From positions 62,001-126,000 of IMG/VR virus record IMGVR_UViG_3300019458_000021: a DNA stretch of 64,000 bases; one strand, given 5' to 3'. The notes under the pieces were generated by a model, which saw only the letters and a list, made by a program, of their open reading frames with translations, had not been told where the DNA came from and did no database searches. The translations under genes and the position numbers were made by a program. Of this stretch, positions 13,466 to 61,951 are shown piece by piece; positions within the stretch are counted from its first letter, which is position 1, and each line of letters opens with the position of its first letter.

Positions 13466-13527
13466 CTCATGGAAAGACATAGAGTGGTATACAGGGCATT
13501 ATCGACTATGTGTAAAGGAGCGTATTC

Positions 13528-13818
13528 ATGCCACCAGTTGTACGTTTAGGTGATGTCTGCACGGGTCATGGTTGTTGGCCACCACGTCCAAATGACCAAG
13601 GATCGCCCAATGTGTTTGCAAATGGAATTCCAGCCCACCGGCTGGGTGATCACTGGTCAACACACTGCTGTCCAAGCCTTCCGGAATGTCATGACAGTAA
13701 CCTCGCAGGAGGAAGTCCAAACGTGTTCGTAAACGGAATTCCATGGGGTCGTATTGGTGATGCAGTAGCATGTGGATCCGCATGTGCCCAGGGTAGTCCA
13801 AACGTGTTTGCAAACTGA
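13528..13818 (+). CDS. PAAR-repeat spike tip protein (T4 gp5.4-like)
   Basis: VRLGDVCTGH, three GSPNVF.NG repeats, PAHRLGD, RIGD..ACGS. Confidence 0.92.
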   Translation: MPPVVRLGDVCTGHGCWPPRPNDQGSPNVFANGIPAHRLGDHWSTHCCPSLPECHDSNLAGGSPNVFVNGIPWGRIGDAVACGSACAQGSPNVFAN

Positions 13819-13826
13819 GATAGTTT

Positions 13827-16914: not shown

Positions 16915-16935
16915 TGATTATCTCCTGATTTCAGA

Positions 16936-16942
16936 TATTTAT
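16936..16942 (-). promoter_or_regulatory. Late promoter motif
   Basis: TATTTAT on + strand upstream of the minus-strand ATG 16914. Confidence 0.6.
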
Positions 16943-17163
16943 CAGTCCATCCTCTTGACGCTGGTCGTCAGTTGTTTGATCATATTGTTGAACGCAACTG
17001 GCTCGACGCGAGCATCGCCCAAATCGTAAGATTGGATGAGATCCTGATCTACGTTCGCAAAGACAAACGTACCTTTTTGCCCCTGTTTCTCGATTTTTGT
17101 CATTTGACAACCGCTTATCTTCAGAAATGCTGCTAAAACGATATCGCTAGTTTTATACTCCAC
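16942..17163 (-). CDS. DUF5659-like small protein
   Basis: YKTSDIVLAAFLK motif; GTG start after SD AAGGAG; ATAAATA at 17182-17188. Confidence 0.65.
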   Translation of the reverse strand: MEYKTSDIVLAAFLKISGCQMTKIEKQGQKGTFVFANVDQDLIQSYDLGDARVEPVAFNNMIKQLTTSVKRMD

Positions 17164-17191
17164 TCTGCGTCTCCTTTGCTGTATTTATCGC

Positions 17192-42551: not shown

Positions 42552-42583
42552 GTAAATATTTACCGTAATGAATGGTATTTATA
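42552..42583. promoter_or_regulatory. Late promoter cluster between divergent genes
   Basis: Palindrome GTAAATATTTAC 42552-42563 and a perfect TATAAATA on the minus strand at 42576-42583. Confidence 0.65.
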
Positions 42584-43674
42584 AGGAGACTGCCTTGAGC
42601 AAACAATTGCGGAAAATGGCCGCACTAACCGATATACACTTCGGTAAAAAAGCAAATTCACAGCTGCATAATGAAGACTGTTTACGATTTATCGATTGGT
42701 TTCTTATTCAGGCGCAAGAAAACAACTGCGATTACATTGCTTTCCTTGGTGATTGGAACGAGAACAGAAGCGCCCTAAACATTGCAACACTCAACTTCTC
42801 ATACCAGGGAGCAAAACGGATTAACGCCGTTGGACTCCCGGTCTTCTTTTGTATTGGGAATCACGACCTTTACCATCGACACACACGAGAAGTGTATTCT
42901 GTCGTTCCTTTCCAGGAATTCAAACACTTCCAAATGATCGATCAACCAATTCTCATTCCGGAGATCGGTGATGGAGCTGTATTCAGTCCATATCTTTTTC
43001 ACGACGAATATCCTGGAATGATGCAGTACTTAGACACACCGTTTTGGGCTGGTCATTTCGAGTTTCAAGGATTTCAAGTCACTGGATATGGTGTGAAGAT
43101 GCAAACAGGACCTGATCCAAAGTTGTTCAAAGGTCCGAAACACATCGTATCAGGCCACTTCCATAAGCGACAAACAATGGATAACATAGTCTACATGGGG
43201 AATTGTTTTCCAATGGATTTCGGTGATACGGGCGATGACAATCGCGGAATGATGATCTATGATCATGTTACACAAGAAATGACGTTCATCAACTGGGCCG
43301 ACTGTCCGAAGTATGTCAAGACAAAGTACACTGATCTTCTTGATGGAGTTGTTGATATTCCTGTTCAATCGCGTGTTCGTTGTATAATGGATGATCCACA
43401 CGCATCATTTGAGGAAATTACTTTTGTTCGAGCAACTTGGCTCGAGAAATACAACCTTCGTGAATTTATCATGGAGGAGACAATGCATCTTGATGAAGCG
43501 CGAACGTCTACAGTAACGACAGCTGATGTGAATTCGCTCGAGACAGACATCGATTCCGCTAAGGATGAAACCAACAGTTTCGACGAACTTGTCGTGCAGA
43601 TGTTGAATGACATCAAGAGTGACGCAATCGACAACACTCTTCTCATCGAACAATACAGGATGATTCCGTCATGA
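42568..43674 (+). CDS. gp47: Recombination endonuclease subunit (gp47, Mre11/SbcD-like)
   Basis: TDIHFG, FLGDW, IGNHD, GHFE, SGHFH metallophosphoesterase motifs; likely real start TTG 42595 after AAGGAG. Confidence 0.95.
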   Translation: MNGIYKETALSKQLRKMAALTDIHFGKKANSQLHNEDCLRFIDWFLIQAQENNCDYIAFLGDWNENRSALNIATLNFSYQGAKRINAVGLPVFFCIGNHDLYHRHTREVYSVVPFQEFKHFQMIDQPILIPEIGDGAVFSPYLFHDEYPGMMQYLDTPFWAGHFEFQGFQVTGYGVKMQTGPDPKLFKGPKHIVSGHFHKRQTMDNIVYMGNCFPMDFGDTGDDNRGMMIYDHVTQEMTFINWADCPKYVKTKYTDLLDGVVDIPVQSRVRCIMDDPHASFEEITFVRATWLEKYNLREFIMEETMHLDEARTSTVTTADVNSLETDIDSAKDETNSFDELVVQMLNDIKSDAIDNTLLIEQYRMIPS

Positions 43675-45617
43675 TCGAGTTCACGTCACTCACACTGCGA
43701 AACTTCCTCTCCTATGGTAACAACACAACGATTGTTAACCTCTCTCGTCAAAACACAACAACACTGATTGTTGGTGAGGACCTCGATAACACCGCTGATG
43801 GAAAGGGAGCAAACGGCGTTGGCAAGACAGCAATCATCAATGCGTTAACATATGCAGTATACGACACACCGATTTCGAATATTTCCAAGGACAACCTTGT
43901 TAACAATATCAACAAGAAGAACATGGAGGTTGTTGTTGAATTCAAAATGCCGAGTGGTGATCAGTACACAATTAAACGTGCTCGTAAGATGAAAGCTGGA
44001 GCAGCTGGAAACACAGTGTACCTGCTCAAAAACGAGGTTGATATTACACCAGATAGTGCCAATGCAACAAATGCACTGATCCAAAAGATCATCGGGATTC
44101 CTTACGAGTTGTTCATCCGCATTGTTGTGTTTTCAGCTGCTCACACACCGTTCTTAGATCTAAAAGCAGCTGACCAAGCCGCAATGATTGAAGAACTGTT
44201 TGGTTTGACAATGCTTTCTGAAAAGGCCACTTACCTTAAGGACATGATTCGCGATACTGAATCCAAGATTGCGATCCAACAGGTGTTGGTCGGTGAGAAG
44301 GAAAGGGAACGTTCTCAATATGACAAACAGGTAGAATCAGCGCGTCAAAGAATTGACGCATGGGTTTTAAAACATAATAAAGATGTCGGTGATCTTGTCG
44401 AAAAGGCAGCGATTTGGAAAAACGAACGAGAAGCCCGGCGTCTCGCAGCAGTTCAAAAAATCGAAGCGTGGGAGTCTGACCATTCGCGTGATGTTAAGAC
44501 GTATGAAGATAGGTTGATTATTCTTTCAGAGATTGACTTCAATCACGAACAGGATGTATTTGATGCAATAAAACAAGCAACTTCAGAACGTGATTCAATC
44601 GTTGCTGAACAACGAGAAAAGACTCGTGATAAAGCAACCCTTATGTCAAAGCTTCAGACAAACGAAAACGAGCTTGAGCATCTTCGGGACGCTAAATGTC
44701 CTCGTTGTTTCCAAAATATGCCAAATGCTACACAAGAGATTCAGAGGTGTGAAACACACTCAAACGAATGGATGGTAGCAATCGAACATATCCAAACTGA
44801 GCTTGCTGAACTCTCAACATCTTTAACAGTATGTGACGATAAAATCAAGACTTGGAAGATCAGCCTTCGGGTTCAAACCATCAACGATCTTGCCCAACTT
44901 CGAGCAGAAAAGGACAGTGCTAGTAGTAACCTGCAGCGAATTAAAACCGCTGTTAACCCTTTGATCGGTACTGATCTTGCCGTACTGGATGAAAAAAATC
45001 CTTATGTAGCTCAGCTTGATCGAGTAGAAAACGAGACAAACCCGCACATAGGTGCCTTCGACGAATTGCAAAAACTCGCACCACCAGCACCGGACTACAC
45101 AGCGATCAACTCACTAACAAAGGTTGTTGAACATCAACAGTTTCTGTTGAAGTTACTGACAAAGAAGGACAGTTTCGTCCGTAAGGCGCTTCTTAACAGA
45201 AACATTCCGTACCTCAACAATCGGCTTCAACACTATCTGTCACTGTTAGGATTACCACATAAAGTTGAGTTCACTCATGAAATGACAGCAAGGATCTCTC
45301 AGATTGGTCGCGAGCTGGATTTTGGTAATCTCTCGGCAGGTCAGGCAGCACGTGTGAATTTCGCACTCGCTCTTGCATTCCGAGATGTCCTCCAAGGTCG
45401 CCACGCAAAAATCAATGTGTGTATGCTCGACGAAGTGCTCGACCATGGATTGGATACAATTGGCGTCCAGGCGGCTGCGCGTCTGTTAAAGCGTAAGGCT
45501 CGCGATGAAGGACTTTCGTTGTACATCACCTCACACAGGGACGAAATTGACCGTGCTTTCGACCATACGATGACTGTGCAGTTGTCGAAAGGTTTCAGTT
45601 ATATCATCGAAGAATGA
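43671..45617 (+). CDS. gp46: Recombination ATPase subunit (gp46, Rad50/SbcC-like)
   Basis: NFLSYGN, Walker A GANGVGKT, Zn-hook CPRC, signature LSAGQ, Walker B LDEVLD.GLD, H-loop TSH. Confidence 0.96.
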   Translation: MIEFTSLTLRNFLSYGNNTTIVNLSRQNTTTLIVGEDLDNTADGKGANGVGKTAIINALTYAVYDTPISNISKDNLVNNINKKNMEVVVEFKMPSGDQYTIKRARKMKAGAAGNTVYLLKNEVDITPDSANATNALIQKIIGIPYELFIRIVVFSAAHTPFLDLKAADQAAMIEELFGLTMLSEKATYLKDMIRDTESKIAIQQVLVGEKERERSQYDKQVESARQRIDAWVLKHNKDVGDLVEKAAIWKNEREARRLAAVQKIEAWESDHSRDVKTYEDRLIILSEIDFNHEQDVFDAIKQATSERDSIVAEQREKTRDKATLMSKLQTNENELEHLRDAKCPRCFQNMPNATQEIQRCETHSNEWMVAIEHIQTELAELSTSLTVCDDKIKTWKISLRVQTINDLAQLRAEKDSASSNLQRIKTAVNPLIGTDLAVLDEKNPYVAQLDRVENETNPHIGAFDELQKLAPPAPDYTAINSLTKVVEHQQFLLKLLTKKDSFVRKALLNRNIPYLNNRLQHYLSLLGLPHKVEFTHEMTARISQIGRELDFGNLSAGQAARVNFALALAFRDVLQGRHAKINVCMLDEVLDHGLDTIGVQAAARLLKRKARDEGLSLYITSHRDEIDRAFDHTMTVQLSKGFSYIIEE

Positions 45618-45991: not shown

Positions 45992-46018
45992 TAAATATAC
46001 ACATATACGGAGAAATGC

Positions 46019-46333
46019 ATGAAACTTGACGAGCTCTTGTCCGAAAATGTGGTGTGGACGGACACTCTGGGACACCTAGTTGATCAAGCGGTCCACTACC
46101 ATTCACAAAACCCTCACGATGATGCAGCTCGAATTCTTCGCCACTACATCGCTCCAATGTTAAGTCACGCTCATGATCATCCGGCCGACATTGATGATCC
46201 TGAAGCATTTCGGACAGCTGTTCATACCCTTCAAACAAACTTTCCTAACCCTGTTGCGGATAGTTTGAAACAGGTCGTACATTTCCTGCATAACGCTATG
46301 CCTTACTACAAGGAAAGTGACAAGGGGATTTGA
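46019..46333 (+). CDS. Hypothetical late protein
   Basis: 104 aa; ATAAATA 45991-45997 and SD GGAG upstream; N-terminus MKLDELLSE. Confidence 0.65.
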   Translation: MKLDELLSENVVWTDTLGHLVDQAVHYHSQNPHDDAARILRHYIAPMLSHAHDHPADIDDPEAFRTAVHTLQTNFPNPVADSLKQVVHFLHNAMPYYKESDKGI

Positions 46334-46365
46334 ATCCCTAAATAGTTCTCCATACGGAGAGCTAT

Positions 46366-46959
46366 ATGCAGAAGAAAGTATTCATGGGGATTGATCAATC
46401 CTACACAAGTTGTGGTGTTGTGTTAATCAACGAACAGAAAGAAGTTCTCAATTGCTATCGTATCACGTCTTCAAAAACTGACGACATATACCAACGCGCG
46501 CAGACGATCACTAACACAGTCAGTTCCTTGATTCAAAAGCATGACCCATACGTGATTGGTCTCGAAGGATTGGCATTTTCGAATTTCGGTAATGCCACAC
46601 GAGATCTCGCCGGCCTTCAATTTTGCCTGGTTCAGCGAATCCGTTACTACCACAATCACCACTACGGACCTGTTATAGTCGCTCCTAAGGAACTAAAGAA
46701 ATATGCATTCAAGGGCAACGCAACCAAAGACAACATGGTTGACAAACTCCCACAAGCCGTGTTAGACTTGTTCAAGGAGCACAACTTCAAGAAGACAACA
46801 GGGTTGTATGATGTAACTGATGCCTATTGGATTGCGTGCTATGCACAAGACAAACACAGACCCGACCAGACCTCCTCGTTATATTTCGTTTTTGATTCAC
46901 TAGTAGATCCGAAGCATTTCACAGCAGAACAGATCAGACAAGCAGTCCTCGACCTCTGA
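46366..46959 (+). CDS. ruvC: RuvC-like Holliday junction resolvase
   Basis: Reads ATG CAG AAG on the + strand at 46366; GIDQSYTSCG, IGLEG, PKELKK..KGNA.K, DVTDAYWIA; TAAATA at 46339-46344. Confidence 0.88.
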   Translation: MQKKVFMGIDQSYTSCGVVLINEQKEVLNCYRITSSKTDDIYQRAQTITNTVSSLIQKHDPYVIGLEGLAFSNFGNATRDLAGLQFCLVQRIRYYHNHHYGPVIVAPKELKKYAFKGNATKDNMVDKLPQAVLDLFKEHNFKKTTGLYDVTDAYWIACYAQDKHRPDQTSSLYFVFDSLVDPKHFTAEQIRQAVLDL

Positions 46960-47274
46960 AACAAACAGATCAAATAGAAACATAGCCGAACAAACCCTAA
47001 CTGTCGGTGGCGTAGGAACAGAGTCCGTCTCTCGAGCCTCAGGAACGATGTCCTGAAAGTTGACCCGCTTGGGAGTGAAGCCCCCTTCACTCATGATTCA
47101 ACGTTTTGCGTCGCAGTTCTACCGCACTGTCGCGCGTGTTCATAAAACACAAAAAGGAGCGGTATGGTGTATCTTTTCAATATTGAAAAGAGAAATGATA
47201 GACGAGAACGTGAGCGTTCCAACGAACGCAGTGAGGAAGGACGCGAACAGTTCTGCTTCGCGTCAGCGAAGCAA
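46960..47274. other. Hairpin-dense non-coding region (candidate origin or structured RNA)
   Basis: Largest intergenic gap in the window, with at least seven inverted repeats including a perfect 20-bp palindrome (47172-47191). Confidence 0.6.
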
Positions 47275-47463
47275 TCAATATTGTGGATACATCTTTTTCG
47301 CTTCAACTTCGAGCCGTTTTTCAATAAACTCTACCATTCGCTGACGTTCAATAGCTGTTGTAACAAACATTGAGTCATACTGGACAGCACCACGCATGAA
47401 GTAGGAAATCTCTACCAATCGATCGATGATGCCTTCGCGCTCAGATTCCATCCGACTAAACAT
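47275..47463 (-). CDS. Small baseplate hub assembly protein (gp51-like)
   Basis: LVEISYFMRG..Y.....ER..M.EFIE.R pattern; follows the gp26-like gene; the frame stays open back to a CTG overlapping the upstream stop. Confidence 0.6.
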   Translation of the reverse strand: MFSRMESEREGIIDRLVEISYFMRGAVQYDSMFVTTAIERQRMVEFIEKRLEVEAKKMYPQY

Positions 47464-47498
47464 TTTTCGAATGTCATCATCAGTTCCTATTCTGAGCG

Positions 47499-48293
47499 TC
47501 AGGTAAAAAAACTTACTGGGTTGGCATTGATGTAAAGTTCAATCGCACCACCGCAATCGAGACATGCTCGGTGAACAATTCCATCCACGCCCCATTGACT
47601 GACTCGTTGAGCTGCTTGTTCAATCTGTCTTTTCCAACCGAGAGGAACCGCTAGAACCCACTGGCGAATCTGATCTTTGTCTGTGATTGTATCAACTGAT
47701 CGAATTACACCGGTGATTGTATCAACGACAAGTTTGATCGCTTCTTCTTCTGTCAGTTCGTTACGTTTCGTTAAAGCGGTCGTTTGATAAAGCTCAACGA
47801 TATGCTGGTATGTCAACGGTTTCAGAGTCACAACCTGTCCATTTGTCATCGTAAGCCTGTATTCATCTTTCACGATAGTCGGATCGACCATCTTTGCCGA
47901 ACGGATGATTTCGTTCAGGTCAATCTGATACGAGTGTTTCTTGGCGTGTTCACAATCATGCGTGAAGAATGCCTCCATTGTTCCTTCAAAAGATACCATT
48001 CGGAGGCAAATCATCAAATAGTCGACGTCCTTCGAAAGTAGTTCGGTTGGCTTGAGAATTTGTGGAATACAGCGCGAGAATACTTCAACAATAGCTTTGC
48101 CAGATAGAAGTTTGTCTGGCGTGCTAAACACAATCTCATCCATTGCGGTCATTGGATACACTTCAAGTTCACCATGCTTAACGTCCGGCGCAAGTTCGCC
48201 GTTCTCGTAGAACAAACCTTGCGACGGTAACTTAAAAGTTGCGCCAGGGATACGCAATTTTTCCATCAATGGATTTTCGTGGGTTTCACTCAT
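47499..48293 (-). CDS. Baseplate hub assembly chaperone (gp26-like)
   Basis: NPL..LR.P...KLPSQG.FY, YPMTAMDEI...TPD.LL.G, DVDYLMI.LR, C.H and CLDC. Confidence 0.8.
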   Translation of the reverse strand: MSETHENPLMEKLRIPGATFKLPSQGLFYENGELAPDVKHGELEVYPMTAMDEIVFSTPDKLLSGKAIVEVFSRCIPQILKPTELLSKDVDYLMICLRMVSFEGTMEAFFTHDCEHAKKHSYQIDLNEIIRSAKMVDPTIVKDEYRLTMTNGQVVTLKPLTYQHIVELYQTTALTKRNELTEEEAIKLVVDTITGVIRSVDTITDKDQIRQWVLAVPLGWKRQIEQAAQRVSQWGVDGIVHRACLDCGGAIELYINANPVSFFT

Positions 48294-48314
48294 ACAGATC
48301 TCCTTAACACTGAG

Positions 48315-48344
48315 TATTTACAAAAGGGAAGCGTCCGATAAATA
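48315..48344. promoter_or_regulatory. Divergent pair of late promoter motifs
   Basis: TATTTA 48315-48320 (minus strand) and ATAAATA 48338-48344 (plus strand). Confidence 0.65.
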
Positions 48345-48366
48345 CGCGGTATGAAGGGGTATTTTG

Positions 48367-50430
48367 ATGGCGGAAGCTAACATCGCAACACAACAAATCG
48401 CAGCTTTGGCTGAATCGTCACGGCAATTGGTTGCCGCGCACAACGCTGAACTGAAGGCGATGAAGCAGTACACAGATGCGCTGAATCAGTCAACAGAAGC
48501 GTTAGAAGCTTACGAGTTGGAGTTGACGAAGGGTCAAGAACTGACGGACGATGAAAACAAACTCCTTCAAAAAGCCCTTGTTGCAAAGCAAAAAGAACTG
48601 CAGATCACCAACAGCCTGAACGCAGCAAACAAGCGACTTCAGGACATGCTTCAGCAGCGCCACAAAATTGCTAAAGAGGATCCAACACTTGGAAAGGTTC
48701 ACAACAGACTTATCCGCGAGCAGATCCAACAGATCAGAACACTGAAGTCCTCTCAGGCTGCCGCTTCCGCTGGTTCCGCGGCGTCCGCTGCCCAGTTTGC
48801 AAAAATGATGAGTGGAGCCGTTGTAGCGCTTCGAGTTTTCACCGGCATTTTGGGCATCATCGTTGGTGCGATACTGGGTCAGTATGAACTCCAAAAGAAG
48901 TTGATGGTCGCCAACCAAGGATTCATCGAAGGAACTGACAACGCAACCCAAGCGTTGATGCGTCAACAAGAACTTGCAACACTTCGTGCGAAAGTTGAAC
49001 CAGTTGAATTTGCTAAAATCATTACATCATCTCGACAAATGGTCAACGCGTTAGGTGGTAATGCAAAGGTAGTTGATTTGTTGTCTGAATCACAACATGC
49101 ATTATATGCAATGACCGGCAACTTCGCCGATGCATTGAAAGCAGCAAACGATATCGCACAATCATTGATCTATAGTGGTTTCCGTCCAACGCAACAAGCA
49201 ATGGAAGCGTATATCCGCGACCTGAAAGACCTTCACATCCTCACAGGTAGAACCGAAGCAGAGCTTCGAGGAATGTTTGACGAGATTGCTAAAGATACCG
49301 ATTCACTCACGTTGTTGCGAGCAGCTCGAGAAGATGAACGTGAAGCAATCCTTGCATCACAACGAGCATTATTTAAGTTGGGTGTTGAAGCTGGTATGAC
49401 GGCTGAACAAGCTCGAGATGCGGCAAAGATGTTGAACAAGATGGTTGCCGCGAAGCCGCTGGAGCGTATTAAACAAGCAGCGAAAATGCGCGCATTTGGT
49501 GCAGCATTCGGTATTGCTGGAAGTGAAGAAGCAGCACGAGCAGTTCTAGCCGGACCAAGAGCAACAGCTGATCAGAAAAAGTCCCTGCAACAATTTAGCA
49601 TGGCGGCAACAAGCTTCGCCGATCAAGCACGAGGTGCAGGCATGGCAACAGAAATTGCTGTAACAACTCTCCTTGACAAGCTTGACCTTGAGCAGTATTA
49701 CGGACCTGGCAGCACATTTTCAACAACGTTAGGACAACAATTGCAAAACAATGCGGGTGATTTGCTGAAACAGTTCATTGACATTGCAAAGGATCCGCTC
49801 GCTAAAGTCGTACAGACAGAAGAATGGGCAAGAACACTTGTTGAATGGGCTGCTGTAAGTGGTGGTTGGTTAGCAATTATATCAAACCACTTGAAAGACA
49901 TTCTCGAAGCGGTTAGGGGTATGTGGGCTTCAATCAAACATGGGTTCGGTTGGGTAGGGGACAAAATGGCTGAATTCTGGCTCGGGTTCAAATCAGTATT
50001 TCTTGAGATGTTCTATGGACTTGCTGAGGCACTGGGTAAAGTTCCTGGTTTAGGTTCACTAACTGAATGGGCAACCGAGGGCAGAAAGAACCTAGATAAA
50101 GAGGCGTTGCGTATTGGTGCAAGTACTCAACCAATTGGTGATAGATCTGCGCTCGTGAAGAAAGAGCGTGAACTAGAAGAGCGCCAGAGGAAACTTGAAC
50201 AGCGGACTACCGCTGCTCCGGTTGAAAACAAACAGGTTGTTGATGAAGCGAAGAAAACGAATAACACACTTGAGAAGCAAAACGCACTGATGGAAGAAGG
50301 TAACGCTATTGCGAAGAAGACGCTCGAGCAAGCGACAACATCTGCAGCTGAAATCAAAGCACGACTTGAAGAAGCGGCAAGAATGGATGCGGCGAAACGA
50401 GGTCTCTCTTATCACGATCTCGTTCGGTAA
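48367..50430 (+). CDS. Probable tail tape measure protein
   Basis: ~687 aa, Ala/Leu/Gln-rich helical, hydrophobic segment FTGILGIIVGAILG, W/F-periodic segment near the C-terminus; next to gp26/gp51. Confidence 0.75.
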   Translation: MAEANIATQQIAALAESSRQLVAAHNAELKAMKQYTDALNQSTEALEAYELELTKGQELTDDENKLLQKALVAKQKELQITNSLNAANKRLQDMLQQRHKIAKEDPTLGKVHNRLIREQIQQIRTLKSSQAAASAGSAASAAQFAKMMSGAVVALRVFTGILGIIVGAILGQYELQKKLMVANQGFIEGTDNATQALMRQQELATLRAKVEPVEFAKIITSSRQMVNALGGNAKVVDLLSESQHALYAMTGNFADALKAANDIAQSLIYSGFRPTQQAMEAYIRDLKDLHILTGRTEAELRGMFDEIAKDTDSLTLLRAAREDEREAILASQRALFKLGVEAGMTAEQARDAAKMLNKMVAAKPLERIKQAAKMRAFGAAFGIAGSEEAARAVLAGPRATADQKKSLQQFSMAATSFADQARGAGMATEIAVTTLLDKLDLEQYYGPGSTFSTTLGQQLQNNAGDLLKQFIDIAKDPLAKVVQTEEWARTLVEWAAVSGGWLAIISNHLKDILEAVRGMWASIKHGFGWVGDKMAEFWLGFKSVFLEMFYGLAEALGKVPGLGSLTEWATEGRKNLDKEALRIGASTQPIGDRSALVKKERELEERQRKLEQRTTAAPVENKQVVDEAKKTNNTLEKQNALMEEGNAIAKKTLEQATTSAAEIKARLEEAARMDAAKRGLSYHDLVR

Positions 50431-50464: not shown

Positions 50465-52159
50465 ATGGCAAAGTTCGTAGACTTCTTCAAAGTTGTCCAG
50501 CCAAAAACTGGCACAACGACAATGACCGATAGTCAAAGCATTGGCGATCAAGGCGTCTATGCAAACTACTCATGGTACCAGCGACTGATTCAAGGATCTG
50601 CCTCTCGTATTACACGTTACCGTGAATATGATTTGATGGACAACGACGTTGAAGTAGCTCGAGCACTGGATACGATTGCAGAAGAAATGACAGGATCTAA
50701 TCCACAACTTGAAATGCCGCTAGAACTCAACATCAAGATGGAGAAGCAAGAGTCAATCCCTTCATCCGTTGTTATGACGTTGAAATCTGCCCTTAGTTAT
50801 TGGTGTGATCTCCATGAATGGGAAACCCGTTTATTTCCCGTAGCTCGTAACTCGATCAAATATGGGGACTGTTTCTTTCGTCGCAAGACGGACACGAAGA
50901 AGTGGGAATACATTCATCCTAAGAACGTTGTTGCAGCAATTGTTGACGAAAATGATATGACGCGAGTGCTTGGATGGCAAATCAAGCAAGACATTAAAGT
51001 GCCGAACTCGCCCTACAATGCTCCTGTCGGTCATTTTGGGAAGTATAGTGAAACACAAGTAGACACATACAGTGCAGATGAGATTGTGTGGTTCACATTG
51101 AACAATGATCTCGGTGAGCAAGCGCCATTTGGTGATAGCGTGCTTCGTGCTATTTACCGTGCACAAAAGCAGAAGGAACTGCTGGAAGATGCAATCATCA
51201 TCTATCGTATCCAGCGTGCTCCTGAACGTCGTGTTTTCTACATCGATGTTGGAAAGATGCCACCACAACGCGTTAAGACGTATCTTGAACAAATCAAGAA
51301 CGAAATCCGCCAGAAGAAAATTCCAACATATGGTGGGGGTGTTGAACAAGTTGATAGTGTTTACAACCCACACAGTATGAATGAGGACTTCTTTTTTGCA
51401 CAACGTCAAGAAGGTAAGGGCTCACGCGTTGAAGTTCTACCAGGGGGACAAGGTCTCGGCGAACTTGCCGATCTCGAATACTTCCAATGGAAAGTCTTTC
51501 GTGGTCTTCGGATTCCTCTGTCATACATGAGAGAAGGCCAAGATAATGCCATCTTTAATGATGGCAACACTGGTATTGCATACATCCAAGAATTGCGATT
51601 CGCTTTATTTGTGAAGCGTCTGCAGCGCTATGTTGAACGTGTTCTTGACAAGGAGTTCAAGCGCTATCTCCACGCTGCAGGAATCAACATCGATACAGCT
51701 ATTTTCAACATTAAGCTGCCAGATCCGGAAAACTTTGGCATCTACAAGCAGCAGAAGCTCGATAGTGAGTTGCTTAATACAATGTCAACGGCGCAGGCTA
51801 TTACATCACTTTCTGCACGATTTGCAGAGAAGAAGTACCTGCAGCTTACAGACGAAGAAATCATCACCAACTATCGTCAGAAGTGCGAAGAGTTGCAGCT
51901 TGATCCAGAAGATTCTGCAAGCATGCCGAAGGTCTACGGTCCACCACCAACTGAAGGAGGTTTGGTAGCTGGTGGCCTTGGAGGTGGTCCAGGCATGTTC
52001 CCAGGAACGCTTGGAGGAGTTGGAGGCGCTCCTGGCATGGAAACCGGTGGTTTAGGTGGTGAAATGGGTGGTCAGCTTCCAGCAGGAGGTCCGGAAACTC
52101 AAACTGCTGGACCCGCACAACTCCCTGGAAATACAGGTGGAATGACGCCGCCTCAGTAA
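50465..52159 (+). CDS. gp20: Portal protein (T4 gp20-like)
   Basis: RYREYDLM...EVARALD.IAEE, LLEDAIIIYRIQRAPERRVFYIDVGKMP, EDFFF..R..G.GS.VE.LPGG, LRIPLSY. Confidence 0.97.
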   Translation: MAKFVDFFKVVQPKTGTTTMTDSQSIGDQGVYANYSWYQRLIQGSASRITRYREYDLMDNDVEVARALDTIAEEMTGSNPQLEMPLELNIKMEKQESIPSSVVMTLKSALSYWCDLHEWETRLFPVARNSIKYGDCFFRRKTDTKKWEYIHPKNVVAAIVDENDMTRVLGWQIKQDIKVPNSPYNAPVGHFGKYSETQVDTYSADEIVWFTLNNDLGEQAPFGDSVLRAIYRAQKQKELLEDAIIIYRIQRAPERRVFYIDVGKMPPQRVKTYLEQIKNEIRQKKIPTYGGGVEQVDSVYNPHSMNEDFFFAQRQEGKGSRVEVLPGGQGLGELADLEYFQWKVFRGLRIPLSYMREGQDNAIFNDGNTGIAYIQELRFALFVKRLQRYVERVLDKEFKRYLHAAGINIDTAIFNIKLPDPENFGIYKQQKLDSELLNTMSTAQAITSLSARFAEKKYLQLTDEEIITNYRQKCEELQLDPEDSASMPKVYGPPPTEGGLVAGGLGGGPGMFPGTLGGVGGAPGMETGGLGGEMGGQLPAGGPETQTAGPAQLPGNTGGMTPPQ

Positions 52160-57815: not shown

Positions 57816-57840
57816 TTTGCCCCTGAAAGCCTGTCATACT
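57812..57840 (+). promoter_or_regulatory. Sigma70-type promoter with downstream inverted repeat
   Basis: TTGATT-17 nt-CATACT; ATGACC-TCAG-GGTCAT at 57845-57860. Confidence 0.5.
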
Positions 57841-57883
57841 GGTCATGACCTCAGGGTCATTGATCAACATTAAGGGGACTCTT

Positions 57884-58126
57884 ATGAAATCAGCAATCGT
57901 TGTTGCTCTTGCAGCAGCTGTGTTCGCCGGTTCGGCAAATGCAGCGATTCTCGAGGGCGTGAAGGACGGATTCAAGCGCGACGTATACGTCAATGACACC
58001 TACAAGCAGCATGATGGTGTTGGCGGCGGTGGCAGTTCCGCTGGTAGCGCTGGTGCAGCGGCAGGTGGTTCAACTGGCGGTGGTTCAACTGGCGGCAACG
58101 GCGGTACGTGTGGCGGTGGTAAGTAA
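57884..58126 (+). CDS. Small exported Gly-rich peptide
   Basis: SD AAGGGG; signal peptide MKSAIVVALAAAVFAGSANA; C-terminal GGGGSSAGSAG...TCGGGK. Confidence 0.7.
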   Translation: MKSAIVVALAAAVFAGSANAAILEGVKDGFKRDVYVNDTYKQHDGVGGGGSSAGSAGAAAGGSTGGGSTGGNGGTCGGGK

Positions 58127-58151
58127 GTCAAAAACGTGCAAACATGAAGGT

Positions 58152-58184
58152 ACACCACGCGTGGGAAAACTCCACCCGTGGTGT
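58152..58184 (+). terminator. Stem-loop after the Gly-rich peptide gene
   Basis: ACACCACG-C-GTGG...CCAC-C-CGTGGTGT; weak U tail. Confidence 0.55.
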
Positions 58185-58234
58185 CGTTCTTGTGGAACGT
58201 GCTTAGGTTCGATTTTCAATACGAAACGATTCTG

Positions 58235-58263
58235 TTGACTCTTTAGTTGTACAAGTGTAGCAT
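58235..58263 (+). promoter_or_regulatory. Sigma70-type promoter
   Basis: TTGACT-17 nt-TAGCAT upstream of SD GGAGG and ATG 58292. Confidence 0.65.
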
Positions 58264-58291
58264 GCGACCACCTTAACAAATGGAGGTCAAA

Positions 58292-58858
58292 ATGCAAGCT
58301 CTTGATTATACAAGGTTCGAACACGGACTTCGTTCTTTTGTTCGACTGATTCCCCTGCGCCGCGACTCCACCCAAGCTAAGTACATCCAAGACGAATTCG
58401 ATCTGTTTTCTGCAATCGACTGTCTTGAGCAGTATCTAAACGAATCTGCTGAAATGTTCGGCAAACAGAAGTACCGCGATACGCCGTTCGATTTCTGTGA
58501 GGACATTCAACTCGACCTCGCCGAACTGTTCCTCAACCATGAAAACCAACAGAAAGCAGCTGTTCTTCGTAAGAAGAACCAGCCAATATACCACCTTGTT
58601 CTGTGCGTGATCCTCGATCTTCTTCGCACCTATCCGCATGGTGATGTCCTGATGCATGCACAGGAAATTTTCAAAGAAATTCGCGAGCGGATTGCGAACC
58701 ATAATTACGATGGTGGATACGACGACGCTCTCGTGATGCAAGAGATCATCTACAAGGAAATCCGTGAAAAGGAAGCCGCTCGCCAGGCGAAGATTGTCAA
58801 ACGTCGCAAGCGTCATGAGGCAATGCTTGAAGAAATTGTCGAGTTGTCGTTCGAATAA
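58292..58858 (+). CDS. Hypothetical early protein
   Basis: 188 aa with own promoter and terminator; helical with a basic C-terminal coiled coil. Confidence 0.75.
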   Translation: MQALDYTRFEHGLRSFVRLIPLRRDSTQAKYIQDEFDLFSAIDCLEQYLNESAEMFGKQKYRDTPFDFCEDIQLDLAELFLNHENQQKAAVLRKKNQPIYHLVLCVILDLLRTYPHGDVLMHAQEIFKEIRERIANHNYDGGYDDALVMQEIIYKEIREKEAARQAKIVKRRKRHEAMLEEIVELSFE

Positions 58859-58875
58859 CTCTTTCACCCTGCAAC

Positions 58876-58913
58876 AACAGCCGTGTTCCGAAAGGACACG
58901 GCTGTTTTGTTTT
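58876..58913 (+). terminator. Intrinsic terminator
   Basis: AACAGCCGTGTTCC-GAAA-GGACACGGCTGTT then TTGTTTT; ATAAATA follows at 58918-58924. Confidence 0.85.
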
Positions 58914-58945
58914 CCGGATAAATACAACTACATCAAGGAGAAAGC

Positions 58946-61900
58946 ATGAGTACTTTCGATATTAGCCACGACTCCCCTGGTTTGCTGCGCTTTGAAGCGC
59001 TCAACATGAGCCTTAAAGTCGAACGAACAAGTGAGACAACTGCTCGAATCAGCTGGAACATTCCAACTCCAGCAGCCGGCTGTACAGCTGATACCCAAGC
59101 ATATTGTGGTATTGTCATCACCGGCGACACAACAGCAATCAATGGAAGCAAGCTTCCAAAGAATGGTGTCGTGTACAATTCTGATCCAACAATGGACAAG
59201 AATTTATTTGCAGGTGACAAGATCGGAACATCGTTCGTTCTTGGCGCTTTCTATCAAGACAGAACAACAACATTTCTTGACGTGACAGGTCTGTTACCAA
59301 ACACACCGTTTTACGTTTCAGGATTCCCGGTTGATTGTGAGTACCGATACTTCTTTGAAGGCGTACATGGGTACTCGCTGGATTTCAAATCTGATGGAAC
59401 CGAACCAACACATGCAACACAAACAGTATTGCTTACAAAGCCAGACGGTACGGCAGGTGTTCTTCCAACAGATTACACAGGTTTGGTTCCAGGTGTAACG
59501 TACACGTTTACAGCTTCAGTTGGTGCAGGAAGCCTAGCGACACAACCACAAGTTCCTCTTCCGCCATCTGCGTGTGTGACAAAACCAACTGTGTACACAG
59601 TTACAATCAAAGGCGAAAATGCTCTTACATATCAAGATCTGATCGATGAGATCAATCGACAGTTCGGGATCTTGACAGGTTGCCCACAAAGTCCACAACC
59701 ACCAAACGCTGGTACGTATTTCTGGAATGTAGTAGCACAGAAACTGTACCTGTTTGACGGATTCCAGCTGATTGAACTCCCTGTGTACATTCAGCCAACG
59801 CCGCCAACGCTTGTTGCGATTGGCACATACTGGTACAACCCGGTTACGAAAATTCTCTATCAATGGGACGGCACACAATGGATCGTTCAGACGGTAATCG
59901 TCTATGCAACGGATCCAACACAACCGATCTGTGATCAATCAATCTGGTTTGACGGAACTGCCGTTCACTTGTGGAATGGAATTGCGTGGTGTGACACAAC
60001 TCTATACACATCGCCCGTCGATCCATCACAACAGAATCCAGCTCCGTGTGGAGCGTACTGGTATAAAGCATCAACAAAACAGATGTTCAAATGGAACGAC
60101 GCACTTGAGATCTGGATTGCCACACTCGTCATCAAAGCGACCCTTAATCCGAACGCCTTGCCAATTGGATTCTATTGGTTCAACTCTTCGAACAACACAT
60201 TGTATCAATGGAGCGGTGTTTCTTGGGTTGCTCAAGTAAACGTACGTATTCAAGAAACAACTCCGTTAATGCCTGGTCCTGGCACGTATTGGTACAATCC
60301 GCTGACAGAAGTCCTACAACAGTGGAATGGTGTTGCGTGGATTGTTTTGCCTGATGTAACAACGTTTGCAACTGATCCTCAGGACCGTAGTTCTTGTGAC
60401 TTATGGTGGGACCTAACTAACAACCTTCTCTATGTTTGGGATATTGTAAACGGTGTATGGAAAGAAGTAACGGTATTCTTTCAGCAAGAGGTTGATCCAA
60501 CAATTCCTCCTGACATAGTTGATGGATCGTATTGGCTGAACCCAACAACACTTGTAATCAACGTGTGGGTGAATGGCTGCTGGATAGAAACGCAGTACAT
60601 CTTTTTCCCGACTGATCCAACACAGATGGTCAATGGAACTGTGTGGTTCAATGGTACAGGTTGGTTCTACTGGGACGGCACGCAGTGGGTTCCATTTGTG
60701 CCGACAATCTCAGAAATCGATCCTTCGTTGATTGCAGCTGGAGCATACTGGTTCAACACCACAAACGATACGTTGAATTTGTGGAACGGTGCATTGTGGG
60801 TGAACCTGTTGTATGTAACAACACCTCCGACGCCTGTTAAGGGTGATTGCTGGTTCAATACGACAACTGGCAAGGTGATGGTTTGGGACGGTACGCAGTG
60901 GATTGATGGAACGCCTGTTGCTTCTGTTGAACTTGACTGTGACGGAAACTTACTGTTCACAGACACATCACACCTTGGCAGTGCATCGTACATTGCTGTT
61001 GACGGTCGTGTGTTGACGAATTCGTTGGTGTTTGGTTTCCCTGTGTGGGAGATTTCTTCAGCAGGTCCTGGAACGTTGTGGATGTCACTTGGAGCTCAAC
61101 CAACGTTCACAAATCCACAACCTGGCATGGACGGCATCTCCGGAGAACCAATGTATCGCCAACTCGGTATTGGCACCGATGGTTCGAGCGACGAGCGTTT
61201 GGCTCTTGCAACAGAAATTCGATTCCAGCTTGGTTATCCAGTTGTTGATGTTGAGTTGAGTAAGGAACAACTCGATTATTTCATCACGAAGGCCATTGAT
61301 GAACTCCGTCAGCGAGCTGGCATTGCATACCGTCGTGGTTTCTTCTTCATGCAAATCGCTCCAGAACATCAGCGATACATTCTGTCGAACACAGCAACTG
61401 GCTACAACAAGATTGTAAATCTCATGGGTGTTTATCGTCTGACATCAGCGTTCTTGAGTTCAGCACACGGTGCTGGAGTGTACGGACAGATTGTTCTTCA
61501 GCACTTGTATAATATGGGTACGTTTGATTTGTTGAGTTATCACATCATCTCCGAATACATCGAACTGATGGAGATTCTGTTTGCTGGTCGAATCACTTTC
61601 ACGTGGAATGAACAAAAACGTGAGCTTCACTTGCTTCACCGATTCCCATTTGCAGAACGTATGGTGCTGATTGAAGCAGCTGTAGAACGCACGGAACAAG
61701 ACCTGCTTTCTGACCGATTCACATTCCCGTGGATTCGTCGTTACGCTCTTGCGCAATCCCGTATTGCTCTAGCGGAAATTCGTGGTAAGTACAGCACCCT
61801 ACCTGGGGCAGGGGGTGGTGTAACACTCAACGCCTCCGATCTGCGCGCTGCCGGTGTAGAAGAAATCAATCTTTGCTTGCAGGATTTGGATAACTTTGTG

Positions 61901-61951
61901 ACAGACACGCCAGAGGAATTTGGCATGGCAGCATCGTTCATTTTGGGTTGA
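58946..61951 (+). CDS. gp13: Neck protein (gp13-like) with ~745-aa N-terminal repeat extension
   Basis: C-terminal ~250 aa: LGYPVVDVEL..EQL...I..A, WIRRYALA..RI.LAEIRGKY..LPG.GGGVTLN..DL...G.EE. Confidence 0.85.
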   Translation: MSTFDISHDSPGLLRFEALNMSLKVERTSETTARISWNIPTPAAGCTADTQAYCGIVITGDTTAINGSKLPKNGVVYNSDPTMDKNLFAGDKIGTSFVLGAFYQDRTTTFLDVTGLLPNTPFYVSGFPVDCEYRYFFEGVHGYSLDFKSDGTEPTHATQTVLLTKPDGTAGVLPTDYTGLVPGVTYTFTASVGAGSLATQPQVPLPPSACVTKPTVYTVTIKGENALTYQDLIDEINRQFGILTGCPQSPQPPNAGTYFWNVVAQKLYLFDGFQLIELPVYIQPTPPTLVAIGTYWYNPVTKILYQWDGTQWIVQTVIVYATDPTQPICDQSIWFDGTAVHLWNGIAWCDTTLYTSPVDPSQQNPAPCGAYWYKASTKQMFKWNDALEIWIATLVIKATLNPNALPIGFYWFNSSNNTLYQWSGVSWVAQVNVRIQETTPLMPGPGTYWYNPLTEVLQQWNGVAWIVLPDVTTFATDPQDRSSCDLWWDLTNNLLYVWDIVNGVWKEVTVFFQQEVDPTIPPDIVDGSYWLNPTTLVINVWVNGCWIETQYIFFPTDPTQMVNGTVWFNGTGWFYWDGTQWVPFVPTISEIDPSLIAAGAYWFNTTNDTLNLWNGALWVNLLYVTTPPTPVKGDCWFNTTTGKVMVWDGTQWIDGTPVASVELDCDGNLLFTDTSHLGSASYIAVDGRVLTNSLVFGFPVWEISSAGPGTLWMSLGAQPTFTNPQPGMDGISGEPMYRQLGIGTDGSSDERLALATEIRFQLGYPVVDVELSKEQLDYFITKAIDELRQRAGIAYRRGFFFMQIAPEHQRYILSNTATGYNKIVNLMGVYRLTSAFLSSAHGAGVYGQIVLQHLYNMGTFDLLSYHIISEYIELMEILFAGRITFTWNEQKRELHLLHRFPFAERMVLIEAAVERTEQDLLSDRFTFPWIRRYALAQSRIALAEIRGKYSTLPGAGGGVTLNASDLRAAGVEEINLCLQDLDNFVTDTPEEFGMAASFILG
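59711..60903 (+). repeat. About 11 Trp-rich protein repeats in the neck protein
   Basis: G.YW.N..T..L..W.G..W units, e.g. GTYWYNPVTKILYQWDGTQW, GFYWFNSSNNTLYQWSGVSW, GAYWFNTTNDTLNLWNGALW. Confidence 0.85.

What the first reader, a model, noticed from the sequence alone, without database searches (positions are those of the whole stretch)
46960..47274. 315-bp non-coding region packed with hairpins and a switchable stem pair
Seen: TCAGGA/TCCTGA (47039-47056); GAGTGAAG/CTTCACTC (47073-47092); GTGTT/AACAC (47136-47150); perfect palindrome TCTTTTCAATATTGAAAAGA (47172-47191); GAACG/CGTTC (47206-47219); and two mutually exclusive 8-bp stems, GACGCGAA/TTCGCGTC (47240-47264) and TGCTTCGC/GCGAAGCA (47254-47273). 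GCGAAGC, a known very stable DNA mini-hairpin, occurs on both strands. No other gap in the window is like this. Candidates: replication origin/primosome assembly site, packaging or resolvase site (it follows RuvC), or an unannotated structured RNA.
Basis: partly seen in the sequence, partly recalled or inferred. Interest (0 to 1): 0.65.

Follow-up and report, generated by a model that had tools for sequence, protein, structure and literature searches.

The report
New structured RNA gene in jumbo phages
The gap between the RuvC and baseplate-hub genes of this uncultured T4-like jumbo phage holds a previously undescribed, strongly conserved folded RNA on the minus strand, preceded by a long hairpin with a conserved loop; its function is unknown.

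Summary
Their density is not what makes the region special: against other 315-nt windows of this genome the fold energy is only z -1.3 (+) and -1.7 (-).

The decisive evidence is comparative. The gap between RuvC and a 62-aa gene is 295-382 bp in every relative fetched. It holds a ~150-nt core found in 27 distinct metagenomic phage sequences. The covariance model hits the window at 46947-47091 on the minus strand (126 bits) and only once in the held 237-kb record.

- **Structure:** 89% of cells pair, against 65% in shuffles (0/500) and 35-42% with slid partners. Three helices show several Watson-Crick pair types.
- **Extra pairs:** a pseudoknot pair and a junction-closing pair also covary.
- **Strand:** G·U outnumbers A·C 34 to 10 (p = 0.0004), which favours the minus strand.
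- **Not coding:** spacing between invariant motifs is 9/8/8 mod 3.
- **No known relative:** nothing in Rfam, GenBank phages or 185,579 prokaryote genomes.

The palindrome and the "switchable" stems are lineage-specific. An origin or resolvase site is not supported; "unannotated structured RNA" is. Function and transcript ends remain untested.

The parts
46947..47091 (-). Conserved core of the structured RNA (about 145 nt here). It holds helices P1/H0 with a pseudoknot pair, P2, P3, Hc, Hd and He, joined by invariant strands (CUCCCAAG, ACUU, GGCU, UGUUCC, and GG of AGGGU).
   Evidence: Covariance model R1 hit at 125.9 bits, E 2.6e-39, full length. Single copy in the 237-kb record. Pair counts. 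Invariant columns.
47040..47055 (-). P2 hairpin (5 bp here).
   Evidence: Three upper pairs covary across the family: UA/CG/AU/GC, GC/AU/CG and GC/CG/AU, with 96% of cells paired.
47014..47039 (-). P3 (AGG at 47037-47039 with CCU at 47014-47016), enclosing the joining strand CUCGAG and hairpin Hc (47029-47032 with 47020-47023).
   Evidence: P3: pair 96:159 is GC 9, AU 7, UA 3, other 3, next to invariant GG:CC. Hc: all six model pairs change on both sides and 97.8% of cells pair. The window's Hc is short, 4 bp.
46986..47007 (-). Hd hairpin: 4 bp, then a 1-nt bulge, then one more pair. Its loop carries the conserved AGUUAGGGU.
   Evidence: 96.6% of cells paired and six of seven pairs change on both sides. 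The extra pair 171:184 is CG 11, GC 7, UA 6.
46955..46969 (-). He hairpin (UCUG/CAGA, loop UUUGUUU). It lies antisense to the RuvC stop codon TGA at 46957-46959.
   Evidence: All four pairs change on both sides; 74% paired in the model alignment, which mis-registers some rows. The loop is also kept in L174, which has no RuvC beside it.
47073..47092 (-). It overlaps H0 (GGG/CUC), the pseudoknot pair G:C and the P1 5' strand, so it is an alternative to them.
   Evidence: I6. Kept with one compensating change in subtype C relatives: GUAAAG/CUUUAC in L171, UAAAG/CUUUA in L075 and L132 (by eye). Family-wide, H0 is 79% paired. Pseudoknot pair 12:33 is GC 16, AU 7, CG 2, and none of 27 is unpaired.
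47099..47164 (-). Variable 5' domain (subtype C).
   Evidence: Single-sequence fold z -2.18. Five subtype C sequences align with similar hairpins. Too few sequences for statistics. Subtypes A, B and D have different 5' domains.
47172..47191 (.). Perfect 20-nt palindrome, not conserved.
   Evidence: I1. Two uncompensated substitutions in sister strain L001. No counterpart in L002.
47195..47222 (-). Promoter-like site TTGGAA-16-TATCAT, pointing into the RNA. Candidate only.
   Evidence: 9 of 12 matches; the number of sites in the region is no higher than in shuffles. L002 keeps TATTAT at the aligned position. L070 has TTGAAC-17-TATAAT just upstream of its RNA. L174 and L069 give no consistent site.
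47205..47254 (.). Degenerate copy of the family's long upstream hairpin. The outer stem is AGAAC (47205-47209) with GTTCT (47250-47254). The inner stem is GCGTTCC (47214-47220) with GGACGC (47239-47244). The conserved loop motif, CUCACUGCGUUCG on the minus strand, lies within 47219-47235.
   Evidence: Fold of 47196-47274: z -2.63 (+) and -1.76 (-). The block is about 85% identical to L002 with a 1-nt indel. Relatives have 12-18-bp stems of unrelated sequence around a similar loop, UUCRCWUYCGYUC-like (by eye). The motif is single-copy in the window and in the 237-kb record.
47240..47273 (.). They are specific to this lineage.
   Evidence: I7, I8. L002 lacks the 11 nt that make the second stem and lacks the partner of the first. 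No terminator-like site was scored here.
47275..47463 (-). Flanking 62-aa gene, the last gene of the baseplate-hub operon. It sets the right boundary of the gap.
   Evidence: 36 proteins at E <= 0.001, the window's own among them; relatives are 47-70% identical. Always follows the PF12322 gene.
46366..46959 (+). Flanking RuvC-like resolvase gene. It converges on the RNA gene.
   Evidence: PF02075 E 2.1e-5 and phrog_159 E 3.3e-27.

Best explanation
The gap holds a stand-alone gene for a highly structured non-coding RNA of roughly 200-250 nt, read from the minus strand.

**Shown.**
- A ~150-nt core is conserved in sequence and in base-pairing across 27 distinct sequences from an uncultured clade of T4-like jumbo phages.
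- The core has at least five helices, one pseudoknot pair and one junction-closing pair.
- Nearly all invariant nucleotides lie in the strands that join the helices.
- The core follows a subtype-specific 5' domain. Upstream of both lies a long hairpin whose stem sequence varies freely but whose large loop is conserved.

**Inferred.**
- It is transcribed on its own, from an AT-rich promoter region between the hairpin and the RNA.
- The upstream hairpin ends or insulates transcription coming from the baseplate-hub operon. Many relatives have an A-tract before it and a U-tract after it.
- The RNA acts in trans. Conservation sits in junctions and a pseudoknot, not in an open linear seed, so the RNA most likely forms a compact tertiary core. 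Such a core would bind a protein or small ligand, or be catalytic, rather than act by simple antisense pairing.

The biochemical function is not known.
For: - **Synteny.** The gap is 295-382 bp and free of called genes in all relatives, although the flanking proteins are only 47-70% identical.
- **Homology.** Model R1 finds 27 hits at E 1e-50 to 6e-11, all in one orientation. The window scores 125.9 bits and has one copy in the 237-kb record.
- **Covariation.** 89.1% of cells pair, against 65.0% in shuffles (0/500) and 35-42% with slid partners. There are 198 double-sided changes against 55 expected. Hc, Hd and P2 show 3-4 Watson-Crick pair types per position.
- **Extra covarying pairs.** 171:184, 12:33 (pseudoknot) and 96:159.
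- **Strand.** G·U 34 against A·C 10 in the helices, p = 0.0004.
- **Not coding.** Motif spacing mod 3 is 9/8/8, and stops occur in every frame in 16-25 of 25 sequences.
- **Independent of RuvC.** In L174 and L167 the same RNA, with the same upstream hairpin type, sits beside other genes.
- **Conservation pattern.** The invariant columns are CUCCCAAG, ACUU, GGCU, UGUUCC and GG, all outside the covarying stems.
Against: - There is no expression evidence. The only runs that hold the window are two cave-metagenome DNA runs.
- The 5' and 3' ends are unknown. Promoter scans are inconsistent between relatives, and no intrinsic terminator follows He in the window.
- The core's own folding energy is ordinary (z +0.20), and the single-sequence minimum-energy fold differs from the covariation-supported one.
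- P1 and H0 are weakly supported: 80% and 79% paired, with little covariation.
- The pair counts were made on an alignment fitted to the model, which favours the model. The slid-partner control and the mutual-information scan partly answer this.
- The proposed mode of action rests only on the pattern of conservation.
Confidence: 0.8

Rival explanations
1. The structure acts in cis on RuvC, in one of two ways. It could be a 3'-UTR element of the plus-strand RuvC mRNA. Or it could be a minus-strand antisense RNA whose 3' hairpin covers the RuvC stop codon and controls RuvC translation or mRNA decay.
For: The core abuts and overlaps the RuvC stop codon (He at 46955-46969, TGA at 46957-46959). In the RuvC-adjacent relatives that keep the UUUGUUUCAG motif, the stop also falls in He. 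The genes converge, so read-through would produce overlapping transcripts.
Against: The wobble asymmetry (34 G·U against 10 A·C) argues against the plus strand. The overlap with RuvC is only 5-13 nt. L174 and L167 carry the full core, He included, with no RuvC nearby. About 45 invariant junction nucleotides are not needed for a short antisense contact.
Confidence: 0.07
2. The hairpins work at the DNA level, as a replication origin, a primosome-assembly site, a packaging site or a cruciform substrate for the neighbouring RuvC.
For: There are many inverted repeats, a perfect palindrome, and d(GCGAAGC)-type motifs near recombination genes. T4 oriF lies near genes 25 and 26 (from memory).
Against: The palindrome and the GCGAAGC pair are not conserved. 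The conserved helices accept G·U but rarely A·C, which is not expected for duplex DNA or cruciforms, where both strands would extrude. GC skew and cumulative skew show no turning point here. The element is single-copy and also occurs away from RuvC and SbcCD.
Confidence: 0.05
3. The gap is an ordinary convergent intergenic region. It would hold two terminators plus chance hairpins, and the apparent conservation would come from close relatedness.
For: The two operons converge here. The upstream long hairpin looks like a bidirectional terminator in many relatives, with A-tract and U-tract flanks (by eye). The gap's fold energy is unremarkable against the genome background.
Against: The flanking proteins have diverged to 47-70% identity, yet motifs of 4-8 nt are invariant in 21 aligned sequences. 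Stems change completely while pairing is kept: Hc is 97.8% paired with four pair types. Slid-partner controls drop to 35-46%. The gap length is kept at 295-382 bp.
Confidence: 0.04
4. The region encodes a small protein that was missed. One candidate is the 69-aa plus-strand ORF at 47164-47373, which has an AAAGGAG ribosome-binding site. The other is the 64-aa minus-strand ORF at 46900-47094.
For: Both ORFs exist. The 64-aa ORF gives tblastn hits in L173, L171 and L075 (E down to 5e-12).
Against: Those hits follow the nucleotide-conserved core. Spacing between invariant motifs is 9/8/8 mod 3, and 18 of 25 sequences have a stop in that frame. The 69-aa ORF's only hits lie antisense to the real 62-aa gene. 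Its 5' part is not conserved in L002, and a 1-nt indel breaks the frame. No Pfam family matched it; the only PHROG hit is marginal (phrog_1613, E 0.0021).
Confidence: 0.01

Closest known systems
Orphan complex structured RNAs found by comparative genomics, some of them phage-associated (GOLLD, ROOL and similar; PMC2864571 and bioRxiv 10.1101/2024.12.08.627333 as listed; the phage association is from memory)
   Same: The RNA was found only through covariation. It has several helices, conserved junctions and a pseudoknot, has no adjacent gene that it obviously regulates, occurs in phage DNA, and has no known function.
   Different: It is much smaller (about 200-250 nt against 500-800 nt). It matches none of the 4227 Rfam models. 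It is confined to an uncultured clade of T4-like jumbo phages.
Phage T4 stable RNAs C and D (species 1 and 2; from memory)
   Same: These are small stable non-coding RNAs of a T4-type phage, and their function is still unknown.
   Different: The T4 RNAs lie in the tRNA cluster and are processed with the tRNAs. Here no tRNA is present in 64 kb. No sequence comparison was possible because no T4 RNA C/D model is held.
Intrinsic (bidirectional) transcription terminator
   Same: The upstream long hairpin sits at the end of the baseplate-hub operon. In many relatives an A-tract precedes it and a U-tract follows it.
   Different: Its loop is 11-20 nt and conserved in sequence, whereas terminator loops are short and free to vary. 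In the window the stem is degenerate and no U-tract follows directly. The scan found no terminator. In L174 and L167 the hairpin does not lie at the end of an operon.
tmRNA
   Same: One homologue (L175) lies 1.6 kb from a phage SmpB gene. The size and the presence of a pseudoknot are similar.
   Different: ARAGORN and Rfam find no tmRNA. No tRNA-like end with CCA and no tag reading frame were seen by eye. No SmpB is found in the window's record or in five relatives' records.
Riboswitch aptamers and self-cleaving ribozymes
   Same: Conserved nucleotides are concentrated in the junctions between helices of free sequence, and there is a pseudoknot.
   Different: No open reading frame follows on the same strand, which rules out the usual riboswitch layout. 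No ribozyme family matches (Rfam). Cleavage was not tested.

Membership tests
Any Rfam 15 family | Covariance-model score at or near the family's gathering threshold | tested here: not met
   There were no hits at E <= 10 in window 46500-47700 and none at gathering score in the whole window. In eight relatives' loci, the four hits at E <= 5 lie outside the gap and far below threshold.
tmRNA | A tRNA-like domain with a CCA end plus a tag-peptide reading frame, detectable by ARAGORN or the Rfam tmRNA models | tested here: not met
   ARAGORN found no tmRNA in the window. Rfam found none.
tmRNA | The partner protein SmpB is encoded by, or available to, the same genome | tested here: inconclusive
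   SmpB lies 1.6 kb from the RNA in L175. It is absent from the window's 237-kb record (68% complete) and from five relatives' partial records. Host SmpB cannot be assessed.
Riboswitch or cis-regulatory leader | The element lies upstream of, and on the same strand as, the gene it controls | tested here: not met
   Downstream on the minus strand lies only the antisense of RuvC. In L174 the RNA is followed by a hairpin and then by a gene on the opposite strand.
Intrinsic terminator (upstream hairpin, 47205-47254, and the stems at 47240-47273) | A GC-rich stem with a short loop, followed directly by a U-tract | tested here: not met
   No terminator-like site was scored in 46000-48500 except one at 48239-48257. 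The loop of the family hairpin is 11-20 nt. U-tracts are present in many relatives but not in the window (by eye).
T4-type replication origin (oriF/oriG: middle-mode promoter plus a DNA-unwinding element that forms an R-loop) | A MotA-box promoter, an AT-rich unwinding element, and origin firing | not testable with these tools
   There is only a partial resemblance (ATTGCTTCG at 47256-47264 on the minus strand, against the T4 MotA box recalled from memory). GC skew shows no shift here. No replication data exist.
Primosome-assembly or ssDNA hairpin site with a d(GCGAAGC) mini-hairpin | The hairpin-forming motif is conserved in relatives | tested here: not met
   GCGAAGC on both strands is present in the window. 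L002 has the motif on one strand only, as a direct repeat. Other relatives have GCUACGC or GCUGCGC once, before a different hairpin.
Small protein gene | An open reading frame and its frame are conserved among relatives | tested here: not met
   Motif spacing mod 3 is 9/8/8. Stops occur in each of the six frames in 16-25 of 25 sequences. An indel breaks the frame in L002.
Structured non-coding RNA (generic) | Compensatory base changes keep the helices, beyond shuffled and slid controls | tested here: met
   89.1% paired against 65.0% (0/500 shuffles) and 35-42% (slid). There are 198 double-sided changes against 55. 24 of 33 pairs change on both sides (first model).
Structured non-coding RNA (generic) | A discrete transcript exists on the predicted strand | not testable with these tools
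   No RNA run holds the window. The strand is inferred from G·U against A·C, 34:10, p = 0.0004.

The most novel reading that the evidence does not exclude
The conserved core is a new class of functional RNA fold specific to jumbo phages. It could be a ribozyme (self-cleaving or otherwise catalytic), or the RNA subunit or ligand sensor of a phage ribonucleoprotein. The conserved-loop hairpin upstream would then be a second binding site for the same partner. The junction-centred conservation, the pseudoknot and the absence of any gene to regulate in cis are all compatible with this. Nothing tested here excludes it.
Probability: 0.15. Interest if true: 0.85.

Novelty: categorically new. Interest (0 to 1): 0.66.

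Why it matters
Structured RNAs this complex, with five or more helices, a pseudoknot and about 45 invariant junction nucleotides, have usually turned out to be ribozymes, riboswitches or cores of ribonucleoproteins. Few are known from lytic phages, and none is known from this clade of 250-350-kb T4-like phages, which has no cultured member.

The family is now defined well enough to test directly. There is a covariance model, 27 sequences and a pairing scheme. The RNA can be transcribed in vitro, probed, assayed for cleavage or ligand binding, and used as bait. It also gives annotators a marker for a gap that gene callers leave empty in every relative.

One caution on the novelty label. 'Categorically new' here means an RNA family without any detectable known relative. 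Whether its function is new is not known.

Tried and rejected
- **Rfam:** searched at permissive thresholds on the window and on eight relatives; nothing in the gap.
- **tRNA and tmRNA:** ARAGORN found none.
- **GenBank phages:** blastn of the 2-kb region and of the best core sequence gave no match.
- **Closest cultured phages (Xanthomonas XacN1 and Xoo-sp13):** model R1 gave only 18-bit and 9.5-bit hits. Both lie inside annotated coding genes and lack the AGGGU motif, so I judged them false.
- **Prokaryote genomes:** the pattern scan of 185,579 genomes gave 0 hits.
- **Distant T4-like loci:** R1 found nothing in 51 loci that carry a gp26-like gene.
- **RNA-seq evidence:** only two DNA runs hold the window.
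- **RNAalifold on a plain MAFFT alignment:** it gave a poor structure because the hairpin arms were mis-registered. I replaced it with hand-defined helices, then a covariance-model realignment.
- **My first model:** it paired the invariant UU of ACUU with the GG of GGCU. The mutual-information scan showed that GG more likely pairs with the CC of UGUUCC (P3). I therefore recomputed the strand test without those invariant U:G pairs.
- **Promoter scans:** inconsistent between relatives, so no transcription start is claimed.
- **SmpB link:** seen in one contig and not general.
- **Loop motif as a dispersed repeat:** rejected, because there is about one copy per genome.
- **Literature:** two full-text searches found no description of this motif.

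Full report
**Setting.** The window is bases 62001-126000 of a 237-kb virus record that CheckV rates 68% complete. A near-identical 193-kb IMG/VR contig also exists. The only sequencing runs that hold the window are two cave-metagenome DNA runs.

The genes mark a distant T4-type jumbo phage:
- SbcD-like and SbcC-like genes (42568-45617, +)
- a RuvC-like resolvase (46366-46959, +)
- a PF12322 'T4 baseplate' hub protein (47499-48293, -)
- a gp20 portal (50465-52159, +)

The closest cultured phages by portal protein are Xanthomonas XacN1 and Xoo-sp13 and Stenotrophomonas CM1 and RAS14, at 51% identity. The 315-bp gap lies between two converging units: RuvC on the plus strand, and the hub gene plus a 62-aa gene (47275-47463) on the minus strand. 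The 62-aa ORF is a real gene. The search returned 36 proteins at E <= 0.001, the window's own among them, and the relatives are 47-70% identical.

**Checking the observation.** All the listed stems are present. The gap folds better than its dinucleotide shuffles, z -3.06 (+) and -2.37 (-). I also folded every 315-nt window of the 64 kb and regressed energy on GC content. On that scale the gap is only z -1.28 (+, rank 61 of 607) and -1.69 (-, rank 25 of 607). Hairpin density alone would therefore not single this region out. Rfam gives nothing, and there are no tRNAs or tmRNAs.

**Comparative evidence.** I fetched the DNA around homologues of the 62-aa protein and the hub protein. Every relative has the same order: hub gene, small gene, a gap of 295-382 bp with no called gene, then RuvC on the other strand. 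This holds although the flanking proteins have diverged strongly.

The closest relative, L002, has a hub protein 74% identical. Its gap aligns with the window's only in short blocks, and a 1-nt indel excludes coding. The more distant relatives share a string of short invariant motifs separated by hairpins whose stems differ completely.

Pattern scans of IMG/VR and of the metagenome collection, filtered with nhmmer, raised the set to 27 distinct sequences. I aligned 21 of them (A3), wrote a consensus structure by hand and built covariance model R1. R1 then behaved as follows:
- It recovers all 27 sequences at E from 2.6e-50 to 5.7e-11, always in the orientation of the hub gene.
- The window hit is 46947-47091, minus strand, 125.9 bits.
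- It finds one copy in the 237-kb record.
- It finds none in 51 loci of more distant T4-like phages.
- It finds nothing credible in XacN1 or Xoo-sp13.
- blastn against GenBank phages found nothing, and a pattern scan of 185,579 prokaryote genomes found nothing.

**Structure.** On the model-guided alignment A4, the first structure gave 88.7% paired cells, against 64.3% in shuffles (0/500) and 35-46% with slid partners. A mutual-information scan then pointed to three further pairs:
- an extra pair that extends Hd across a 1-nt bulge (CG 11, GC 7, UA 6)
- a pair that crosses H0, so a pseudoknot (GC 16, AU 7, CG 2, none unpaired)
- a pair linking the base of P2's 3' side to the nucleotide after UGUUCC (GC 9, AU 7, UA 3). 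With the invariant GG and CC beside it, this makes a 3-bp helix (P3) enclosing Hc.

The refined 33-pair structure gives 89.1% paired against 65.0% (0/500) and 35-42% slid, with 198 double-sided changes against 55 expected. Hc (97.8% paired), Hd (96.6%) and the top of P2 (95.8%) are beyond reasonable doubt. He is supported, with four pairs all covarying, but the alignment mis-registers some rows. P1 (AAAG/CUUU) and H0 (GGAG/CUCC) are weak.

The invariant nucleotides (CUCCCAAG, ACUU, GGCU, UGUUCC, GG of AGGGU) lie in the joining strands or in P3, not in the covarying stems.

The core's own minimum-energy fold is ordinary (z +0.20) and differs from the covariation-supported fold. The evidence for this structure is therefore evolutionary, not thermodynamic.

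**Strand and coding.** In the refined helices G·U occurs 34 times and A·C 10 times, binomial p = 0.0004. Several pairs alternate between Watson-Crick and wobble only as read on this strand, for example C:G 18 with U:G 5, and A:U 15 with G:U 8. The RNA is therefore on the window's minus strand.

It is not a protein gene:
- The distance between CCCAAG and UGUUCC is 0, 1 or 2 mod 3 in 8, 8 and 9 sequences.
- Each of the six frames carries stops in 16-25 of 25 sequences.
- tblastn hits of the gap's ORFs only follow the nucleotide-conserved core or the antisense of the 62-aa gene.

**Map in the window (minus-strand RNA, window coordinates).**

| Element | Coordinates |
|---|---|
| P1 | 47085-47088 with 47056-47059 |
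| H0 and pseudoknot pair | within 47067-47084 |
| P2 | 47051-47055 with 47040-47044 |
| P3 | 47037-47039 with 47014-47016 |
| Hc | 47029-47032 with 47020-47023 |
| Hd | 47003-47007 with 46986-46991 |
| He | 46966-46969 with 46955-46958 |

He overlaps the RuvC stop codon (46957-46959).

- TCAGGA/TCCTGA is P2.
- GAGTGAAG/CTTCACTC is a subtype-specific hairpin that competes with P1, H0 and the pseudoknot. It is kept, with one compensating change, in the four closest subtype relatives.
- GTGTT/AACAC lies in the variable 5' domain.
- GAACG/CGTTC lies in a conserved block, but its pairing is broken in L002.
- The palindrome has two uncompensated changes in the sister strain.
- The two exclusive 8-bp stems are absent in L002.

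**Subtypes and context.** The 5' domain differs between groups:
- **Subtype A** starts AUCCCU and has a small hairpin with a perfectly covarying pair, A:U 6 and G:C 10.
- **Subtype B** (L069, L120, L002) has an insertion near P2.
- **Subtype C** includes the window.
- **Subtype D** (L174, L167, L170, L175) lies in another genomic context. Its neighbours are a CoaE-like kinase, a cytidylyltransferase-like gene, a metallophosphoesterase and a GIY-YIG endonuclease.

The RNA is therefore an independent module and is not tied to RuvC.

**Upstream hairpin.** Most members carry a long hairpin 40-90 nt upstream of the RNA. This includes L174 and L167 of subtype D. The stem is 12-18 bp of unrelated sequence. 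The large loop resembles UUCRCWUYCGYUC and is preceded by GCU(A/U)CGC (by eye).

In the window and L002 the stem is degenerate (AGAAC/GTTCT and GCGTTCC/GGACGC, 47205-47254), but the loop motif is kept. This explains the block conserved between the two. The motif is single-copy in the window's record.

Many relatives have an A-tract before this hairpin and a U-tract after it, which suggests a two-way terminator or insulator. The conserved loop asks for more than that, such as a binding site. This is unexplained.

**Most likely mechanism.**
- **Shown:** a conserved, pseudoknotted, multi-helix RNA fold on the minus strand, single-copy, non-coding, and independent of its neighbours.
- **Inferred:** it is transcribed on its own. 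A promoter-like TTGGAA-16-TATCAT lies at 47222-47195, and L070 has TTGAAC-17-TATAAT directly upstream. Other relatives are inconsistent.
- **Inferred:** it acts in trans through a compact tertiary core. Conservation is in junctions rather than in an open seed, and no same-strand gene follows.

Whether the core binds a protein, senses a ligand or is catalytic cannot be decided here. One contig places the RNA 1.6 kb from a phage SmpB gene. Neither the window's record nor five relatives' records have SmpB, and the RNA has no tmRNA features, so I treat this as a side observation.

**Known relatives and novelty.** Nothing in Rfam 15, in GenBank phages or in two literature searches describes this RNA. 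In kind it resembles the orphan complex RNAs found by comparative genomics. As a family it is new.

**Limits.** There is no expression data and the transcript ends are undefined. The pair counts come from a model-fitted alignment. Several descriptions of the upstream hairpin and the 5' domains rest on reading alignments by eye.

Noticed in passing
L175:1678-2109 (+); RNA homologue at L175:1-99 (-): A phage contig encodes SmpB, the tmRNA-binding protein (PF01668, E 5.6e-34), 1.6 kb from a copy of the new RNA. No SmpB was found in the window's record or in five relatives' partial records.
   Followed up: partly
window 47275-47463 (-): A conserved 62-aa protein with no Pfam or PHROG family always follows the PF12322 baseplate-hub gene. 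The search returned 36 proteins including the window's own; relatives are 47-70% identical. Its function is unknown.
   Followed up: partly
L066:3525-4184 (HNH); L069:4121-5077 (DUF723); L174:2047-2613 (GIY-YIG): Free-standing homing-endonuclease-type genes sit next to the RNA locus in several relatives. In L066 an HNH gene lies between the RNA region and RuvC. There the core is so diverged that the covariance model misses it (nhmmer only, 46 bits).
   Followed up: no
L071 (NCBI GCA_054338295.1, contig JBTETU010000004.1, 46 kb): A contig filed under a 'Nitrososphaeraceae archaeon' MAG carries the phage hub gene, the 62-aa gene, the RNA, RuvC and SbcC. It is probably a phage contig binned by mistake.
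   Followed up: no
window about 8296-8820 (+) and 58801-59325 (-): These are the most negative GC-corrected folding-energy residuals in the 64 kb (z -3.8 and -3.2), stronger than the gap under study. Both lie inside long ORFs (6141-8852 and 58946-61951). Not examined.
   Followed up: no
window 13417-13826, 16915-17191, 57816-58279: These are other stretches of 277-464 bp without an ORF of 110 aa or more. Rfam finds nothing in them. They were not compared with relatives.
   Followed up: no
   Followed up: partly
L180 and L181 (Xanthomonas phages XacN1 and Xoo-sp13): In the closest cultured phages the slot between the recombination endonuclease and the large ORF before the portal holds the late sigma factor (gp55-like), not a hub gene plus RNA. 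The RNA locus is therefore specific to the uncultured clade.
   Followed up: partly
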